A stretch of 64,000 nt of DNA from Gracilinanus agilis. Taxonomy: Eukaryota. This document shows, in pieces, positions 20,427 to 54,943 of this stretch. The notes beneath the pieces are model-generated. The model was not told the DNA's origin. It saw nothing but the letters and a program-made list of their open reading frames with translations, and did no database searches. The stretch lies in assembly GCF_016433145.1 (NCBI RefSeq), contig NC_058134.1, forward strand, positions 216,036,257-216,100,256. The letters run 5' to 3'. The translations under genes were made by a program, and so were the position numbers. Positions within the stretch are counted from its first letter, which is position 1; every line of letters begins with the position of its first letter.

Positions 20427-20545
20427 CATGTCCAGCAGGATGTCCACTTTTAGCCTCAGGAGATTGTTCTCTTCTTCCAACTGCTGATTCCTTTTCCGAA
20501 GTCGCTGGGTCTCCCTTCGATCCCCACCTCCGCAGGCCCCTGACT
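20427..20545 (-). CDS. CBY1: CBY1 coding exon 3 (coiled coil)
   Basis: ESGACGGGDRRETQRLRKRNQQLEEENNLLRLKVDILLDM; acceptor CTCCCACAG|, donor ATG|GTGAGG. 119 nt. Confidence 0.96.
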
Positions 20546-26730: not shown

Positions 26731-26808
26731 AGAATGCAGATTGGAGAGAGAGGCTGACTTCCGAGGGGGTGTCTTCTTGGGACTGAATGTATTCCCGAAG
26801 AGGGGCAT
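26731..26808 (-). CDS. CBY1: Chibby homolog 1 (beta-catenin antagonist, basal-body protein), first coding exon
   Basis: MPLFGNTFSPKKTPPRKSASLSNLHS; ATG at 26808, donor TCT|GTGAGT. The exon's acceptor TTCCCTCAG| is at 26849, leaving 40 nt of 5'UTR in the exon. Confidence 0.96.
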
Positions 26809-28799
26809 CTCTAGTGGGCTCCCAGCACAGCTCTGCCTTCTCCTGGAGCTGAGGGAACAAAGCAGGGGCAGAAGTTAGATGACCAGTGGGGATAGTCTCT
26901 GTCACTGAGCCTATATCAGGACATGCTGCCTAGCACCCCCTGCCAGCACATCAATGACCCTCCCAACCACTATCAGATGCTTCTTTCTATCTTGGACTGC
27001 AAACACCCCCCAAGGCCAAGTGCCATTCCTTCATTAATTATCTCTGCAAAGCAACAGCAGGCACTCAGAAGAGGTGTGCTAACCTGCAGACAGAATGTCT
27101 TGGTCATCACTAGACTTACTGAGACAGAAGAATGGGGCTGATATCAAGCTACTTGTCTGCTACTTGGGGTCCTCACTAGGCTTTTACTGGCCACCCCAAA
27201 GGACCATTTGAGGGTTTCTGAGGCAGCCCAAAGCAGTGGAGGTAGAGTCATAGAATCACAGAGAGGACCAGCCAAAAGAGATTTTCTTTTACAAAAGAGG
27301 AAACTGAGGCCCAGAAAGGTTGCCTTGCCTTGGGTCATACAGGTAGTGGACAGCAAATCTGGGATTTGAACAAAGGCCCTTGGGCTCTGTAGACATTCTA
27401 TGCTCTGGCTATTAACTCATGGCCAGGGATCGTATATTTCTCCAACACTCAGCAGCCCCCCAATCTGCCCTCTCCAAAGCAGCTCATTAGAGAGACCAGG
27501 CTGGTTTTACAAATCACCCTCCTTTCCCAGTTTACCCATTTTCTCCATTGGATTACTGGTACTAACTGTGATTCCACTACTAACTCTGTCTGGAGGAATG
27601 CTCCTAGGGATGCTAAAGTCTAAGTGGGCAGAAGGCAGGAATCATTTTGGCAATTATCTGTGGAACCACTTAACCTTCACTTTCTAATGTGCCCATGACT
27701 ATGACAATCTCCAAGGCTTCTCAATTTAAGTTCAGATGTGAGGGTCAGAGGGAGGTCTCTCACAACTCTCCATTGCCAAGACTGACCTTATTTACCATTG
27801 GGTTGTTGAGAGGGTTCAAGGGATCCAAAGCCACAATCTGGTCAAGGGCCCTAAAAATGTTTCCCCTTAAAAATTATTGTTCTGTTACTGTTAAGCACTT
27901 CTAGACAGTTTATCATATGTCTACGGCATGCCAAAAGGGCAGGCATGTGCACAGCACTGTGGACATAAAGAGGAATCTAAGTCTAGTCCAGAGGAGAGAT
28001 GGGTGGAGAGACCAGAACCCCTGGAGGACACCACTCTCAGCTTGGCAAGCCCTTAGAAGCCATCAAGTCCAACAAGTTACAGATGAGGAAACTGAGGTTG
28101 AGACTTTGCCCAGCGTCATCTAGTAAGTTGGTAAGGGGTTGAGGCAGAATTCAAACCCTGAGTCTTCCTAACTGACCCCTGGCATTCCAACCCCCAGACC
28201 CCTTGGACTCTGAACAAATCTCTGAAGCTGCTTCTAGAGCTCCAACACCTATGCTCCTAAACCCAGGGAGATGGTGATAAAGAAAGAGAGAACCCTTAGT
28301 CAATTTTAGGACGTTGAACAAACTGGAACCATTATTAATAGCCCCAGGCTAAACCCTGTATCCCAAGTATTCACCAAACAGGAGCTTCTGTTCTGAGACA
28401 ATACAACTGCCAACAACAACATACGGACTCCTACTATGTGTCAGGCACTGTAGAAATCGCTTTACAATCATTATCCCATTTGATCCAACAACTCTGGGAT
28501 GCAGGTGTTATTATCATCTGTGCTTTACAGATGGGGAACACTAAGGCGGACAGAGGTGAAGTCACTTGCCCAGGGGGTCACACTGCTGGGAAGTGTCTGA
28601 AAATGGTTTTGAACTCAGATCTTCCTGACTCTAGGACCAGTGCTCTATCCATTTCATACATACAAACCAGGCAATCACTTAAAATATGAACATTAAGCAC
28701 TTGCTGTGTCTGGCGCCTCTGTGGGTACCCAGGATGGCCAAATACAAACAAGTCTGCCTTAGGGAACTGATTGCCTACTGGGAGAGCATCATCAGCAGA

Positions 28800-37700: not shown

Positions 37701-39537
37701 TAACGCAAACCTTTTCCCAACAATGTCTTGTCTTTTTACAACAATGCAATGGCCAAAAATAAACTCTTTTCTTTTCTTCAGACCACACACAAGTTAATTA
37801 GAAAATCTTGCTCTCTGGAAACAAATAACAGCTTGACAAAAATGTGAAATTATAGTACTTTAATCAAAAAAGTTAATACCCAGAATAAAACCTCTCTCAT
37901 TACCAATATTAAAATTAACCACATTAGAATCTTAAAGTTATGAATTTCTGGACCTCCTTTTGCCTCCTGCTGGATAGTTACATATCCAGATTACCAGCTC
38001 CTGCCTCTTCAGCTTTTGGAAGGAATTAACTGTTAATACAACTTTATAGACATTATTTGCTAACATATCACCAGCATTTAGAATACCATTAGACATGCAA
38101 TATAAGCAAAACCTCACAGAACATTGAGAAGAAATGCAGAACTTAAGTTCTTAAACTTCTATGAAAAGCTCTTTCACAAAAATGTACAACCATTTAAGCC
38201 TTAAGCCATGGCATCTCAAGCCGAGAAGAACCTTTCCCTATTTTAATGGACTTAAAGCAGTTACTCAGAACTTAACACTCAGGCCCCCAAATTCCAGCTC
38301 AGTTTCCCATTCAACGTTTTCAGCCAATCATTCATGCCTCTGAACTATACTCTCCTTGCCCTTACTTTTACCACCAACACACACACACTCAAAAATTTAG
38401 TCAAGCTTGGAGCTTGTAGTCAGGTTGAACTAGACTCCCATTTTGTCCAATTTACCTTGGGATCAAATTCTGCTACCATCTGTCATCTTAGCCAAACCTT
38501 TGCCTGCACTAGATTCATATCTATATATAAGTATATATAAAATATCTCCTTTGCCGCCATTTTGTCAGGTGGTTCCTTGGGCTGCCGGCTGCCCCCACCT
38601 CCTCCAGGGGCCACAGACATGCTGTTCCCCATTCCAGCAGCCCCCGAGTGGCTCTGGATTCTGCAGCTCTCTGTGCAATCCACAAACCAATGCTTGATGC
38701 CCCCTTAATTAAAGAATGGGTCACTCCCAAATACAGGAGACTGAGTCCTTTTTCTGAGAGTCACTTACCTGGCTCCTCTGCTAACTGGACTCATGACTTA
38801 ACCCTAAACGGGCTATGTGGGTACCTCACGTCTTGGGGTCCTCCTCAGCAGGGTGGCTCAGGCAACTGGGATTTTGGAATCTTGGTGGGACCTCCATTTG
38901 TTGACTGGGAAAAAACACAGAACTATTAAATAGTCAGAAAAGCCCCTCTTTAATCAAGGAAAGGGGGTACAGGGCCGAGTTAGGCCTCTACACAGAGCTA
39001 CAAGCCAAACGCCTATGCAGAGTCTGAGGATTGAACTCTGGATGCTCTGGTCCCTAACCCCTGGGAAAGCCAACTGCACTAGATTGGACAATTCCAAGAA
39101 GCCACTGAGGTTGGGAAACTTAAATACCTTTCTTGGGGAACTTGGGAACTGAAGATGAGAGGCATAGTTGATTGACTTTACAATGGTAACAAAGGAAAAT
39201 GGGGAGTCTCAGACAGAAATAACTAGTGAGGGGCAGATGCTTTACAATGGACACAGAAAGGAAAGACCCAGCCAAAGGCTGGGCCACCTTAGTAAAGGAC
39301 TTTGACCTAAGGGGAGAAACCATTGGGACAAAAGAGATACTTAACTTTTGAGGGGATTAGCCATCCCCATTAAGGCCCATTGTTAGTCTGAGACTAGTGA
39401 AGTTGGACTTTCCCTCAGGGAGGAATTCTATTGTGACAAGGTTAAACCTGAGGCTTTCACCTTCAAGCTAAGTAAACTGGGGTTCATTAAATCTTTCTAG
39501 GCTACAAGTTTGGGGGCTTCTAGATTCTACATCAACA
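34741..39537 (-). mobile_element. Two-LTR non-coding ERV (class I-like, VL30-like), 4797 bp
   Basis: Direct repeats 34741-35375 (3' LTR, 635 bp) and 38899-39537 (5' LTR, 639 bp) with TG...CA ends. 4-bp TSD ACAC (34737-34740 / 39538-39541). PBS TGGAGGTCCCACCAAGAT (minus, 38896-38879), 17/18 to the tRNA-Gln PBS. PPT AAAAGGGGTGTG (35387-35376). No internal ORF above 100 aa. Confidence 0.95.
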
Positions 39538-39878
39538 ACACGCAGTGAGCTACAGGTTAGTCTGATGGAAAGGCCAATCCGGCTCTTGGGCTTCTGGCTT
39601 CCCCAGATTCACTTAATGGGACCTAAGACCATTGCTTCTCTGTGGGCTTTGTCAGGATCGAATAACAATGAAGATGCACTTAGCACAGTGCCTGGTGCAT
39701 AGTAGGCCCTATGGAAAGGCTAGCTCTGATTAGAAATAGTTGTTTTTTCTGCAAGGCTTTACAGCTAGTTTACAAGCCCTTTCTGTAGCCCATCCCCACT
39801 CTATATACGAAGAAGCCCCAGGGCAGCATGGTGAAGGAATTTCCCCTGAAGCAAGTAGCTCAGAAGAGGCCTTGAACT

Positions 39879-40040
39879 GGGGCAGCTAGGTGGCACAGTG
39901 GATAGAGCCTCAGGCCCAGAATCCAGAGTACTTGGGTTCAAATTTGACCTTGGGCAAGTCCCTTAACTCCCTTTGTCTGGCCCTTACCCTTTCTGTCTTG
40001 GGGCTATTCAGACATAAAATAAGAGTTTAATTTAAAAAAA
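39879..40040 (+). mobile_element. Older CORE-SINE (internally deleted)
   Basis: GGGGCAGCTAGGTGGCACAGTGG head, B-box, core, A-rich tail. Confidence 0.75.
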
Positions 40041-40409
40041 TAAAAAGAGAGGCTTTGAACCCAGACTTTGGTAACTACAGACCTTTTCCCTGTCTGATGC
40101 TGGCCTTGCTAGGGTATTTTAAATGATGAATGACGTTAAAAGCCCCCAGTCTCCCTTTAAGAGGCTCCCTATTGCCTGAGTGGCCTTCCTCATTTAATAT
40201 CTGCTGGGTCTTTTGTCTGAAGAATTAGCAGATGGGTCTTAGTTGGTCTTTTCCACCTTCTGGTTTCCCCAGATGGTCCTGAATTATTTGTGACTCCTGT
40301 CAGTTGGTGGATCAGAGAAGGGGAGGGGTGCTTTTTGTTTGTTTCTTTTATTTTTATGAAAACTTTCTGACAGTGTGGAGGAACGTGGATAGCGTTTGGT
40401 ATTGACAAA

Positions 40410-40533
40410 ATGGAGATTATCAACTTCAGCGCCATCCCCATGATCCCCCTGGATGAAAAAGTGGAGATTCCACCCTTGATGAGAAGCAAAATTCATGAAA
40501 AGTTTAAGAATTACCTGGTAGAAAACCCACCCC
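40410..40533 (+). CDS. FAM227A: FAM227A first coding exon
   Basis: MEIINFSAIPMIPLDEKVEIPPLMRSKIHEKFKNYLVENPP, resembling the remembered human N-terminus MEVINLTTLPMIPVDE...LENNPP. Kozak AAAATGG; exon acceptor CTGACAG| at 40373; ends at U12-type donor |GTATCTT, phase 1. An upstream in-frame start cannot be excluded. Confidence 0.85.
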
Positions 40534-41657
40534 GTATCTTCTGGTGATGTCACTGGTCTCTGACCATCTGGGGCTAGGGGGAGGGGTTTGGGGAGGCAGA
40601 GTCAGACCCTGGAAACATGGCCTGACTTAGAGAATTTAGGGAGCTCTTGGGACCTTCACATCACCCCAGACAAGGAAAAAGGGCTCCCTTATAAGAAGTC
40701 AGGCTTTCACGCTCTCTTTTTCTTCATTCTGGGCTTCATAGAAAGAGAAGGGACCCAAGCAGTCATCTGGTCCACATTTATGCCTTTGGGCCAGTCAGGA
40801 GGCTTCCACTGTTGGGAGACAGTTGGCCTGGGCTCAGGCACCATGTAGTGTTTATCTTCATCCAGGAAATGGAGTCAGAGAAATAAGATCTGAAGGCCCT
40901 TCCTCCTTTGCCATCTATGAGGAGACAACTTACCTCTGCCTCCCCCTCAAGAGCCACTCCCCAGGTGGGCCTCTCTCCTTGGAGGCCAATTATCACAGGG
41001 GTCCCCCTGCCTCATTTACCCTCCTCTCCAACTGCCCCTCTCATTAAATGGGACAACCCTTCCAGTGTTACCTGCTTAGATCTTTCCTGTGGAGCTCAGC
41101 CAGTCTGGGTGTCCAGACACAGGAGCTCCCATGAAGCCCTTCAGGCTCCCTTCCTCCCAGTTCAGGGAGAGGTAATATCTCTAGCAGAGCTCATCTTACC
41201 TTTGAGGCTTATTACCTCCCCATAGAGGGGAGGAAACTGAGCTTCAGGGGAGGCAAGAATGCCAGCTGGAAAGTGGTCCCAGCTCCTTGGTGACTGCCTC
41301 CTAGGTGTGGACACATGTGGCCAGCCCTCCTGCCTGCCTCTTCCTTCCCTTGTAACCAGTGGTAGCCAGACTTATCTCCTCTGCTTTTTCCCCAGTTGGC
41401 CTAAACCTGCTTCTTTTCTTCCCTTTTCATTCTGTCCAGTCTAGACAGGACTAGAGTTGAGTAGAGACTCTGGGAGAGACAGTGGTGTGGAGTCAGGAGA
41501 TAGGAGCTGTGTGGCCATGGGCCTATCTGTTGCCTCTGGGACTCAGGGGTTCATTTGCAGAATAAGGAGGTTTTACTAGGCTGGGGGGCTCAGGGAGGCT
41601 CCTTCTAGCCCAGCTCTCTCCAGTGCCATGAGGTTCTTTAACAGCCATGTCTTCCAG

Positions 41658-41755
41658 TGTGTCTTGTGGGCTCCTTAGACAAGGTGAACAGAAAGATCGC
41701 CCAAATCGACCTGAAAATGAAATTCCAGACGACCGGCATCCAAAGCCATTTACTG
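41658..41755 (+). CDS. FAM227A: FAM227A coding exon 2
   Basis: (L)CLVGSLDKVNRKIAQIDLKMKFQTTGIQSHLL; acceptor CTTCCAG|, donor CTG|GTAAGA. 98 nt, restores phase 0. Confidence 0.88.
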
Positions 41756-43699
41756 GTAAGAATGGGGCCCAAAGAGACTTCTGGGCTTTTGTGGCTGGGG
41801 CTGGGGGGAGTCAGCACTTCAGTTCTTCTGGGCATCCCTTTAGGCACTGCCTCCACTGATACCAACTCCATCCCCCTTCTTCCAAGCAGCAAGGCATCAT
41901 TGTGGACAAAGAGAGATCTGGCTTCTGAAACAGGAAGACTTGGGCTCGAATCCTGCCTCTGACACATGTAGGCTAGGTAACCCTGGGCACCGGAGTGCTC
42001 TAGGCAACCTCTGATATTAAAAATTGCAGAAAAGGTGCCAACCTGTATTGGTAGAGAGAGTTTCTTCTCCTTGGAGTTCCTGCTGACCAATGGTTTAGTC
42101 CCCAGCCTTTTCGTTTCCCCTGAGGAGGTCTTTCTGAGTCGCTCAATCTGAAGATACATGCCAGGCCAGACCTTAGATCATAGACATACAGGCCATCAAC
42201 AGGCCAAACTTGGCATTCCAAAAAATGATGGTCATCTCCATGACTGTCTAGTTCTCTAGGGAAACTTCCGTGCTAGAAGAAAAAAGAGGGAATAGTTGAG
42301 CGAAGGGAGGAATTTTTAACTATCAATAATAGACAAGAGTAATTCTTACCCTCCCCCACATTGGCATGGCCCTTCATTGGATAATGGCACTTTAATTGGT
42401 GTCATCCATTGACTCTCCCCAGGAGGGAATGGGTCTTGGAAGGAGTCTTGAAAGAGATCTTGGGACCAAACTACATACATTTCACTCAAAAACTTGATGT
42501 TGGCCAAGTCCTGTGGTTCTATTGGGCACTCTGATTTTTTGTCTTCATTTGTTTTGGATTGTAAACTTGCCTCTTCCCTTGTGATTAAATTTTTGCTAAA
42601 CTCAATTGTGACCTGGCTGTAAGGGAGAAAAGGGGCTAGGGTTGGACCAAGGAGGAATCAGACTTGGCAGCACACGCTTGGAGCTACAGTGAGACCCAGA
42701 ATACAGTGGGGGTATTGGGCTATGGGAGATTCCCTGAGAGAAAGCCAAGAAGTCATCCCCAGAAAGCAGGCAGGGCAGCTGCCAAATCCCTGACCCACTG
42801 CTGGTCATTCGAGTGACCTTGGGAAGGTCTGTTATCTCCTTAGGCCTCTATTTCCTCATCTATAAAGGAGAGGGCTCAGACTAGATGATTTCTGAAAATG
42901 CAGCCAACTCTGAACCATCTGAACCCAACCTGTACCTCAGGACACTATGGACACTGGTCTAGTGGCAGACCCAGGTTCACTACCTAATGCCCTGAACATC
43001 TTGGTAGACAGTTTCATGAGTCACTGTAGCTTGAACACATCCTTACAGGATGGCAAAGCTTGAAATTAGCTCCTCCCAACTTAGTTAGCTGGACCTTGCC
43101 AAATGTGACATTGTTCATTATGGACTCCTCCTTGGAGGTGCCATGACTCATGCTCCTTGGGCATACCCTTTAGGAGCCAGGGGCAGGGCCCTCCCCAGGT
43201 AAGGCCAGAGATCAGTAAGAAAGGAGGAACCACAGTCACATCCAAGTGAAAACAAAAGTACACAATAACCTTAGCCTATCTTGTGTCCAGGCCCTCCTCT
43301 GGCTGCCCTTCCTCTTCTCTGAGGCACTCCTGATTTCAGGGCAATGTGGGGTCATGGGAAAGCATGCTTGCTTGCAAGGCAGAAGACCTACATTTAATTA
43401 CTAGCCTTGCCATGGAGCAATTGGCAAAGGGACACTTGGTCTCTTTCCAGGCCATTACTCCTCTCCCTCTTGCATAAATGCTCCTTCCTCCCATAGCGGG
43501 TATGAGGGTCAAATGAGTTATTTGGAAAGCATTTAGTGCTGGTACATGTTACTACTTAATCCATCCTTCCTTCCTCCCTCCTTCCTTCCCTTCTGCCTTT
43601 CTTCCCTTCCTTCTCTTTTTCTCCCTTCCTCCCTCTTTCCCAACTTGATTAATACATTGAAAAATGCTTGAAAACATGTGCAATGTGTAACACCAGTAG

Positions 43700-45289: not shown

Positions 45290-45501
45290 NNNNNNNNNNN
45301 NNNNNNNNNNNNNNNNNNNNNNNNNNNNNNNNNNNNNNNNNNNNNNNNNNNNNNNNNNNNNNNNNNNNNNNNNNNNNNNNNNNNNNNNNNNNNNNNNNNN
45401 NNNNNNNNNNNNNNNNNNNNNNNNNNNNNNNNNNNNNNNNNNNNNNNNNNNNNNNNNNNNNNNNNNNNNNNNNNNNNNNNNNNNNNNNNNNNNNNNNNNN
45501 N
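45290..45501. other. Assembly gap (212 N)
   Basis: Run of n characters. Confidence 1.
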
Positions 45502-45941: not shown

Positions 45942-46033
45942 AGAAGGCCAGCAAAACCAAGAAGAAGACGCGCAAGTTAGTCCCACAGTCAACTCCATCA
46001 ACTATAAGTGGTCCACATCCTGGTCCAAAAAAG
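45942..46033 (+). CDS. FAM227A: FAM227A coding exon 4 (low-complexity, basic)
   Basis: Strong acceptor CCCCTTGTCCTTTGTAG|, (E)KASKTKKKTRKLVPQSTPSTISGPHPGPKK, strong donor AAG|GTAAGC. 92 nt, phase 1 to 0, which fits the downstream exon. Confidence 0.8.
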
Positions 46034-49048: not shown

Positions 49049-49192
49049 AGAGCCCAGAAGGATGGGCTGGCTGAGCTATTCCATGCTCCAGACTTCAATG
49101 AAGAGAAGCCCAGTGAGCTGCCAAACGGGGTGAACTACAGTGAGATGGTGGGCAATGTTATCCGGGCTCAGGAAAGCAACATCACTGGCAAG
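49049..49192 (+). CDS. FAM227A: FAM227A coding exon 5
   Basis: RAQKDGLAELFHAPDFNEEKPSELPNGVNYSEMVGNVIRAQESNITGK (LPNGV..MVGNV motif of FAM227); acceptor CTCTCCAG|, donor AAG|GTAATT. 144 nt. Confidence 0.92.
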
Positions 49193-54841: not shown

Positions 54842-54943
54842 GCCTTCTGTGCACCTTTAGAAATGGCTAAATTCTTCACTTCTCCATACTCCAAAGCTAT
54901 CGTCTTGGATTGCTTCTGGTGGATCTTTCATGAGAGATATGAG
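54842..54943 (+). CDS. FAM227A: FAM227A coding exon 6 (FWWIFH motif)
   Basis: AFCAPLEMAKFFTSPYSKAIVLDCFWWIFHERYE; acceptor TTCCCTCAG|, donor GAG|GTAAGG. 102 nt. Confidence 0.95.

What the first reader, a model, noticed from the sequence alone, without database searches (positions are those of the whole stretch)
40534..41657. U12-type (minor spliceosome) intron in FAM227A with a frameshifting cryptic U2 donor beside it
Seen: frame continuity puts the donor at CCC|GTATCTTCT, a very poor U2 site but close to the U12 consensus GTATCCTTT. The 3' end has TTCTTTAAC (41634-41642; U12 branch consensus TTCCTTAAC) 15 nt before the AG, with no long pyrimidine tract. A U2-like donor CTG|GTAGAA lies 16 nt upstream (40517/40518); using it would shift the frame. 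Established: minor introns are rate-limiting, and cryptic U2 sites are used when U12 splicing is impaired. Inference: FAM227A output depends on minor-spliceosome activity, right after its start codon.
Basis: partly seen in the sequence, partly recalled or inferred. Interest (0 to 1): 0.7.

Follow-up and report, generated by a model that had tools for sequence, protein, structure and literature searches.

The report
Known minor-class intron in marsupial FAM227A
The intron right after the start-codon exon of the cilia/testis gene FAM227A in this marsupial carries the signals of the rare minor (U12) spliceosome. Human and mouse FAM227A are already catalogued as having such introns, so this is a real but ordinary feature.

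Summary
The exon starting at ATG 40410 ends at 40533 in phase 1. The intron starts GTATCTTCT, has TTCTTTAAC with its branch A 16 nt before the last intron base, a weak pyrimidine tract, and ends AG at 41657. Exon 2 is 41658-41755.

The gene is FAM227A: two downstream exons match Pfam FWWh, and CBY1 lies head-to-head upstream.

FAM227A is already listed in the Minor Intron Database, with two minor introns each in human and mouse, one of them 5'-proximal. GTATCTT donors and TCTTTAAC branch sites both occur among accepted minor introns.

In a distant marsupial relative the first 18 intron bases are identical, while the exon is only 49% identical in protein and the rest of the intron does not align.

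No RNA evidence could be obtained, so the junction is inferred from sequence alone.

Verdict: a U12-type intron, about 80% confident, already known in kind, low interest. This scan also noted the same stretch once before (s1-153941), as the same first-reader finding.

The parts
40410..40533 (+). First coding exon of FAM227A from the ATG (its 5' boundary was not determined). 41 codons plus 1 base, ending in phase 1.
   Evidence: The ORF and ATG are kept in the relative L001, with dN/dS about 0.48.
40534..41657 (+). The intron (1124 nt), GT-AG termini, read as U12-type.
40534..40542 (+). U12-type 5' splice site GTATCTTCT (consensus GTATCCTTT; T at +6, C at +8), preceded by C-2 C-1.
   Evidence: GTATCTT occurs 40 times against 853 GTATCCT among the MIDB 5'ss strings, and KRTCAP2 ACT|GTATCTTCC scores 81. 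As a U2 site it scores about -1.0 bits.
40534..40551 (+). 18-nt block identical in a distant marsupial (GTATCTTCTGGTGATGTC).
   Evidence: 18 of 18 identical, against 81/124 in the exon and about 35% in the following 200 intron columns.
40544..40549 (+). U2-like donor GT (CTG|GTGATG, junction 40543|40544, phase 2) inside the conserved block.
   Evidence: about 5.4 bits, 92nd percentile of GTs, identical in L001. Frame consequences.
40518..40523 (+).
   Evidence: about 3.2 bits. Not present in L001. Gives a stop at codon 39-43.
40545..40547 (+). In-frame TGA four codons into the intron. A retained intron would end the protein after 45 residues.
   Evidence: conserved in L001.
41634..41642 (+). 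U12-type branch-point motif TTCTTTAAC (consensus TTCCTTAAC). The likely branch A is 41641, 16 nt from the last intron base.
   Evidence: TCTTTAAC occurs 49 times against 243 TCCTTAAC in the MIDB table, and TTTTCTTTAACT scores 91.
41656..41657 (+). 3' splice site AG; the first usable AG after the branch motif.
41658..41755 (+). Exon 2 (98 nt), frame A: (L)CLVGSLDKVNRKIAQIDLKMKFQTTGIQSHLL. Ends in phase 0 at a strong U2 donor, CTG|GTAAGA.
41677..41678 (+). Second AG, 21 nt downstream and also in frame. It is 37 nt from the branch A, too far for U12-type use.
49049..49192 (+). Downstream FAM227A exon (phase 0 to 0) carrying the start of the FWWh domain.
   Evidence: PF14922, profile 2-23, E 0.011.
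54842..54943 (+). FAM227A exon with the FWW motif of the FWWh domain.
   Evidence: PF14922, 42 bits against a cut-off of 25, E 1.1e-10, profile 27-64.

Best explanation
The 1124-nt intron at 40534-41657 is a GT-AG U12-type (minor-spliceosome) intron of FAM227A. It lies between the start-codon exon and the next coding exon. It is most likely the orthologue of the 5'-proximal minor intron already catalogued for human and mouse FAM227A.

Inferred mechanism, from established knowledge of the minor spliceosome: the U11/U12 di-snRNP recognises GTATCTTCT and TTCTTTAAC together. The T at +6 still allows a G-U wobble with U11 and U6atac, while the C at +8 costs one pair. The first AG at a permitted distance, 16 nt after the branch A, is used. 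This joins C|TG into a Leu codon.

With C-2 C-1 and no G at +5, U1 cannot use this exact site, so correct FAM227A mRNA needs the minor spliceosome. A retained intron terminates translation at the TGA at 40545-47.

Shown here: the sequence anatomy, the frames, donor conservation and gene identity. Inferred: the junction itself, which spliceosome acts, and intron-level orthology.
For: 1. Anatomy and frames. Among the donor, acceptor and middle-exon combinations tested, those that read exon 2 in its better coding frame all use the donor at 40533|40534. They stay open into the Pfam-confirmed FWWh exons.
2. The 5'ss scores about -1.0 bits as a U2 site, the 43rd percentile of all GTs, against 9-10 bits for neighbouring real donors.
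3. Both variant motifs are accepted in MIDB. GTATCTT occurs 40 times, including KRTCAP2 ACT|GTATCTTCC (score 81) and RALGAPA2 (75-81). TCTTTAAC occurs 49 times, with scores of 78-91. By analogy with MIDB criterion 3 (minor 5'ss above 50 and BPS above 65), this intron should pass.
4. FAM227A has two minor introns in both human (one at chr22:38645646-38650026) and mouse (chr15:79648832-79649636) in MIDB Table S1. Table S2 gives CCT|GTATCCTTC and CCC|ATATCCTTG, the same '..CC+pyrimidine' exon end as here.
5. In a distant marsupial (exon dS about 0.78), intron bases +1 to +18 are identical. The base just before them differs, C against T, which would be synonymous (CTG/TTG Leu) if the relative's exon 2, which was not obtained, also begins with TG. 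The three preceding codons all differ at third positions.
6. The 3' end has a weak pyrimidine tract (9 of 13 nt; acceptor score 3.5 against 7.5-9 for neighbouring U2 acceptors) and a C at BPS position 11. The exon starts with T, not G. The 2024 taxonomy paper links these features to ZRSR2 and minor-spliceosome use.
7. Exon 2 frame A has GC3 of 0.69 and a codon log-likelihood of 7.9. The other open frame has 0.28 and 4.0.
Against: No annotated orthologue protein spanning the junction could be fetched, so the junction rests on sequence logic alone.

The 5'ss has two departures from consensus, and the branch motif lacks the CC at positions 5/6 that the 2024 paper ties to firm minor-spliceosome recruitment.

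The conserved block runs nine bases past the U12 5'ss and contains a U2-like GT. Together with a 92-nt candidate exon, that GT also gives an open reading chain.

Which of the two catalogued human and mouse introns Table S2 describes is not stated, so intron-level orthology is inferred. The 3' end of the relative's intron was not available.
Confidence: 0.8

Rival explanations
1. Both spliceosomes use this intron. The U12-type donor at 40533|40534 would give the catalogued mRNA. The conserved U2-like GT at 40543|40544 would give an alternative mRNA that stays in frame only when the 92-nt exon 45942-46033 is included, and that reads exon 2 in its second open frame.
For: The GT and its surroundings are identical in the distant relative. 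It is the best U2-like site nearby, at about 5.4 bits. The chain 40543 + 41658 + 92-nt exon is open into the FWWh exons. The 92-nt candidate has the strongest splice-site pair found between exon 2 and the FWWh exons and is not a repeat within the window.
Against: With 2 U2-like donors x 2 acceptors x inclusion or skipping, I expect about 0.3 open chains by chance, so one open chain is not significant. Frame B of exon 2 has GC3 of 0.28, far below the other exons. The 3' end looks U12-type and has a weak pyrimidine tract. No RNA or orthologue supports the 92-nt exon.
Confidence: 0.08
2. The intron is in practice U2-type. The major spliceosome uses CTG|GTGATG at 40543|40544 as the only productive donor, and the U12-like motifs are relics or coincidence.
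For: As for the dual reading: the GT is conserved and the chain is open. TTTAAC also fits the degenerate U2 branch consensus yUnAy.
Against: It needs a U12 5'ss and a near-consensus U12 branch motif at the right distance to sit by chance at a frame-compatible junction (my estimate: about 1e-5). Otherwise it needs a switch that changed the reading frame of exon 2. GTATCTT would then be coding, yet it shows no synonymous change while the three codons before it all changed. Human and mouse keep minor introns in this gene.
Confidence: 0.05
3. The donor is right, but the acceptor is the AG at 41677-78. The exon would then start at 41679, seven codons shorter.
For: It is in frame and open. It is preceded by tgtgtcttgtgggctccttag, a moderate pyrimidine stretch (acceptor score 3.0 against 3.5). 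The 21-nt piece has a slightly negative codon score.
Against: It lies 37 nt from the U12 branch A. From established knowledge, U12-type 3' sites lie about 10-20 nt from the branch, and MIDB cites an optimum of 11-13. A U2-type acceptor cannot pair with this non-U1 donor.
Confidence: 0.04
4. The gene model differs. The true first coding exon or exon 2 of FAM227A lies elsewhere, and this pair of open frames is not joined in mRNA.
For: Exon 1 found no annotated FAM227A in 1.84 billion representatives, only a genomic ORF. Exons 1 and 2 have no Pfam match.
Against: The ATG, the frame and the 'NPP' exon end are conserved with dN/dS of 0.48 in a distant marsupial. The exon lies between CBY1 and the FWWh exons, on the correct strand. 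The splice signals sit exactly at the ends of the open frames.
Confidence: 0.03

Closest known systems
MIDB minor introns of human FAM227A (chr22:38645646-38650026, 5'-proximal; chr22:38597357-38599763) and mouse Fam227a (chr15:79648832-79649636; chr15:79620856-79623454). Olthof et al. 2019, PMC6717393, Tables S1 and S2.
   Same: Same gene, with a minor intron in its 5' part. The human site is GT-AG type, CCT|GTATCCTTC with branch GTTTCCTTAGCA. The exon end is '..CC + pyrimidine', as in the window (CCC|) and consistent with the relative (CTT|). The gene is testis-enriched in their expression table.
   Different: The marsupial donor has T at +6 and C at +8, and the branch motif has T for C. The mouse site is AT-AC type. 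It is not stated which of the two catalogued introns the printed 12-mers belong to, so intron-level orthology is inferred rather than shown.
KRTCAP2 and RALGAPA2 minor introns (MIDB Table S2)
   Same: They carry the same weakened 5'ss variant. KRTCAP2 has ACT|GTATCTTCC, identical to this intron through +8 (score 81). RALGAPA2 has CTT|GTATCTTTT (75-81). Both are accepted as minor introns.
   Different: These are unrelated genes. They only show that this 5'ss variant is tolerated.
'Minor-like' introns of the six-class taxonomy (PMC11347168)
   Same: Consensus scores are reduced compared with textbook minor introns, and the branch motif lacks CC at positions 5/6.
   Different: [quoted passage not shown] It therefore resembles the minor-spliceosome-dependent subset. 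Its class under that scheme could not be computed here.

Membership tests
U12-type (minor) intron, GT-AG subtype | 5' splice site close to |RTATCCTT and not dependent on an exonic AG | tested here: met
   GTATCTTCT matches 7 of 9 consensus positions and is preceded by CC. The GTATCTT variant occurs 40 times in the MIDB 5'ss strings, with scores of 75-81. No PWM score was computed for this site itself.
U12-type (minor) intron, GT-AG subtype | Branch-point motif TTCCTTRAY about 10-20 nt upstream of the 3' splice site | tested here: met
   TTCTTTAAC matches 8 of 9 positions at 41634-41642, with the branch A 16 nt from the last intron base. TCTTTAAC occurs 49 times in MIDB, with scores of 78-91.
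U12-type (minor) intron, GT-AG subtype | No strong polypyrimidine tract between branch site and 3' splice site | tested here: met
   There are 9 pyrimidines in 13 nt, interrupted. The crude acceptor score is 3.5, against 7.5-9.0 for the three neighbouring U2-type acceptors.
U12-type (minor) intron, GT-AG subtype | Splice signals conserved in orthologues | tested here: inconclusive
   The 5' side is met: +1 to +18 are identical in a relative with exon dS of 0.78. The 3' side could not be tested because contig L001 ends about 200 nt into the intron. Human and mouse FAM227A are catalogued minor-intron genes, but intron-level orthology is inferred.
U12-type (minor) intron, GT-AG subtype | Junction seen in RNA, and splicing dependent on U11/U12/U4atac/U6atac | not testable with these tools
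U2-type (major) intron | 5' splice site fitting MAG|GTRAGT at the frame-preserving junction | tested here: not met
FAM227A (FWWh-domain protein next to CBY1) | FWWh domain (PF14922) encoded downstream on the same strand | tested here: met
   Exon 54842-54943 scores 42 bits against a cut-off of 25, E 1.1e-10, profile 27-64. Exon 49049-49192 matches profile 2-23 at E 0.011.
FAM227A (FWWh-domain protein next to CBY1) | Head-to-head synteny with CBY1, which separates FAM227A from the paralogue FAM227B | tested here: met
   Minus-strand frames read MPLFGNTFSPKKTPPRKSASLSNLHS near 26.8 kb and NQQLEEENNLLRLKVDILLDM near 20.5 kb. The motifs were recalled from memory of CBY1 and no family scan was run. 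That the two genes are neighbours in human is also my own knowledge.

The most novel reading that the evidence does not exclude
The conserved 18-nt block holds two overlapping donors for two spliceosomes: a U12-type site at 40533|40534 and a U2-type site 10 nt downstream. The U2 choice would be coupled to inclusion of the 92-nt exon 45942-46033. Both mRNAs would then return to the same downstream frame (+10 +92 = 102 nt) but translate exon 2 in two different frames. Minor-spliceosome activity would thereby switch the N-terminus of FAM227A instead of simply limiting its output.
Probability: 0.06. Interest if true: 0.6.

Novelty: already known. Interest (0 to 1): 0.14.

Why it matters
It matters little beyond annotation. 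It shows that the catalogued 5'-proximal minor intron of FAM227A probably reaches back at least to the marsupial-eutherian ancestor. In marsupials it persists with a weakened 5' splice site (T at +6, C at +8) shared by two distant lineages. That makes it a small data point on how far U12 signals can drift without class conversion. The conserved U2-like GT just downstream and the strong 92-nt candidate exon would be worth a look in RNA-seq, but nothing here makes an open question newly testable.

Tried and rejected
2. Orthologue proteins across the junction. Word searches with exon 1, with the exon-2 ORF and with the FWWh-start exon all came back blank. Full-length FAM227A lies outside the length band for such short queries. 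The one exhaustive search, with exon 1, gave only a 70-aa genomic ORF. That ORF is a singleton cluster on a single 1.6-kb contig.
Exons were joined only inside a local script to test frames, and no sequence was printed.
4. PDB, Pfam on exons 1 and 2, the ESM Atlas and Rfam over 39500-42500 gave nothing.
5. The supplements of the intronIC paper, the ZRSR2/U2AF1 paper, the 2024 taxonomy paper and the Mendelian-disorder paper hold no FAM227A entry as text. Two FAM227A variant papers gave no coordinate-to-codon link.
6. Codon-usage scoring separates the two open frames of exon 2 only weakly, 7.9 against 4.0 bits.
7. The candidate exon 41844-41976 was rejected by eye. Its translation ends in a string typical of a common marsupial SINE; this is my own knowledge and was not tested.
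8. Only generic 7-8-nt motif variants were counted in a published table. No DNA from the stretch was sent to any sequence collection, and no human contig was fetched.

Full report
**What is there**

An ATG at 40410 opens 41 codons (MEIINFSAIPMIPLDEKVEIPPLMRSKIHEKFKNYLVENPP). Base 40533 (C) is the first base of codon 42. The next bases are GTATCTTCT.

At the far end, TTCTTTAAC lies at 41634-41642. Thirteen bases follow (AGCCATGTCTTCC, 9 pyrimidines), then the AG at 41656-57.

Exon 2 runs from 41658 to 41755. The C of exon 1 plus TG makes Leu. The frame then reads CLVGSLDKVNRKIAQIDLKMKFQTTGIQSHLL and ends in phase 0 at a good U2 donor, CTG|GTAAGA (about 9.1 bits).

**Gene identity**

Two downstream + strand exons match Pfam FWWh (PF14922), the FAM227 domain. 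Exon 54842-54943 scores 42 bits against a cut-off of 25, E 1.1e-10, profile positions 27-64. Exon 49049-49192 matches profile positions 2-23 at E 0.011.

On the minus strand upstream, two frames read clear Chibby-like strings near 26.8 kb and 20.5 kb. The motifs came from my memory of CBY1, and earlier notes of this scan also name CBY1 here. A FWWh gene head-to-head with CBY1 is FAM227A rather than FAM227B; that synteny is my own knowledge. Earlier notes call the genome a marsupial, apparently an opossum. I did not test that.

**Is it more than chance?**

Taken singly, the motifs are not unusual. RTATCYT occurs 15 times on the + strand against about 16 expected. TCYTTAAC occurs twice against about 2 expected.

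The signal is the placement. The donor motif starts exactly at the only GT that keeps exon 2 in its better coding frame. The branch motif sits 16 nt before the AG that opens that exon.

That is the 43rd percentile of all GTs in the window, while confirmed neighbouring donors score 9-10 bits.

The acceptor has the weakest pyrimidine tract of the four acceptors examined: 3.5 against 7.5-9.0 on a crude scale.

**What is known**

FAM227A is already a catalogued minor-intron gene. MIDB Table S1 (Olthof et al. 2019, PMC6717393) lists two minor introns for each species:
- Human FAM227A: chr22:38645646-38650026 (4381 nt) and chr22:38597357-38599763.
- Mouse Fam227a: chr15:79648832-79649636 (805 nt) and chr15:79620856-79623454.

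Table S2 prints one pair of sites for the gene. Mouse has CCC|ATATCCTTG with CTTTCCTTGACA. Human has CCT|GTATCCTTC with GTTTCCTTAGCA. 5'ss scores are 98-99 and branch scores 82-88.

The exon end '..CC + pyrimidine' fits the marsupial '...CCA CCC C|' and gives Leu with a following TG. The table does not say which of the two introns it shows, so I treat intron-level orthology as likely but not shown.

**Are the variant motifs tolerated?**

In the same table GTATCCT occurs 853 times and GTATCTT 40 times. TCCTTAAC occurs 243 times and TCTTTAAC 49 times. KRTCAP2 (ACT|GTATCTTCC, score 81) matches this donor through +8. RALGAPA2 (GTATCTTTT) scores 75-81. Branch strings such as TTTTCTTTAACT score 91.

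MIDB calls an intron minor if, among other routes, the minor GT-AG 5'ss score exceeds 50, beats the other matrices by 10, and the branch score exceeds 65. By analogy this intron should pass. I could not compute the scores themselves.

The 2024 taxonomy paper (PMC11347168) ties use by the major spliceosome to A-2 G-1 at the 5'ss, a G at the first exon base after the 3'ss, and a pyrimidine tract. It ties minor-spliceosome use to CC at branch positions 5/6 and a C at position 11. Here the 5'ss has C-2 C-1, the exon starts with T, position 11 is C, and positions 5/6 are CT. That is three of four features on the minor side.

**Conservation**

The exhaustive protein search with exon 1 found one hit, a 70-aa genomic ORF on a 1586-nt Logan contig, L001. 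Flanking non-coding sequence aligns to the window, so it is the same locus in another species, evidently a distant marsupial.

The exon is 49% identical in protein, with dS about 0.78 and dN/dS about 0.48. The ATG, the frame and the final Asn-Pro-Pro are kept, although all three of those codons differ at their third base.

The last exon base is C here and T there. That difference would be synonymous (CTG/TTG) if the relative's exon 2, which I could not obtain, also starts with TG.

The next 18 bases, GTATCTTCTGGTGATGTC, are identical. After them the intron aligns at about 35%, which means it does not align. So the weakened donor, T at +6 and C at +8, is old and under constraint.

The contig ends about 200 nt into the intron, so the branch site could not be compared.

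CTG|GTAGAA at 40517|40518 is real, lies 16 nt upstream and is in phase 0. With either acceptor it runs into a stop by codon 39-43. It scores only about 3.2 bits. The relative has no GT at that position, only a weaker one three bases further up. It is an incidental GT, of the kind expected near any exon end.

It scores about 5.4 bits, the 92nd percentile of GTs, and lies inside the conserved block in both species. Used with 41658 it shifts the frame. Exon 2 is also open in that second frame.

A 92-nt candidate exon at 45942-46033 has the strongest splice-site pair found between exon 2 and the FWWh exons. It is not repeated within the window. Including it would restore the frame.

I do not give this much weight, for four reasons:
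- With the combinations tried, about 0.3 open chains are expected by chance.
- The second frame of exon 2 has GC3 of 0.28, against 0.5-0.69 for the other exons.
- The 3' end looks U12-type.
- If GTATCTT were coding, some synonymous change would be expected there.

The nine conserved bases beyond the U12 5'ss remain unexplained.

A second in-frame AG at 41677-78 lies 37 nt from the branch A. That is too far for U12-type use.

**Limits**

No annotated orthologue spanning the junction could be fetched. The exons are too short for the length-banded word search. Exons were joined only in a local script to test frames. No human contig was fetched. Human information comes only from the coordinates and 12-mers printed in the MIDB tables.

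**Verdict**

This is a U12-type GT-AG intron of FAM227A, at about 80% confidence. The remaining 20% is spread over dual use, U2 use from the downstream GT, the later acceptor, and a wrong gene model.

It is a real feature but already known in kind. The gene is catalogued in human and mouse, and its dependence on the minor spliceosome is the generic expectation for such genes. Interest is low.

Noticed in passing
window 40543-40551: Nine intron bases beyond the U12-type 5' splice site (GGTGATGTC, containing a U2-like GT and an in-frame TGA) are identical in a distant marsupial, although the rest of the intron does not align. The constraint on these bases is unexplained.
   Followed up: partly
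window 45942-46033: A 92-nt candidate exon has a 20-nt pyrimidine tract, TAG| and AAG|GTAAGC, the strongest splice-site pair between exon 2 and the FWWh exons. If included after exon 2 in the main frame it brings a TAG at codon 87, so it would act as a poison exon. It is in frame only with the downstream U2-like donor. It has no Pfam match and is unique in the window.
   Followed up: partly
window 40241-40320: An 80-nt non-coding block about 100 nt upstream of the ATG is nearly identical between the two marsupials (75 identical columns, plus one 11-nt indel). That is far better conserved than the coding exon (81/124). It may be a promoter or 5'-UTR element of the FAM227A/CBY1 region.
   Followed up: no
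window 40410-40532 against L001 1240-1365: The FAM227A N-terminal exon evolves fast: 20 of 41 residues identical, dN/dS about 0.48, one codon indel. It found no annotated FAM227A among 1.84 billion representatives at E<=0.001.
   Followed up: partly
window about 26750-26830 and 20440-20500, minus strand: CBY1 coding exons (MPLFGNTFSPKKTPPRKSASLSNLHS; NQQLEEENNLLRLKVDILLDM) lie head-to-head with FAM227A, about 13.6 kb before its ATG. Earlier notes place an LTR element in part of that gap.
   Followed up: partly
window about 45290-45500: The window contains 212 N in total. An ORF listing shows a long X run here, inside FAM227A intron 2.
   Followed up: no
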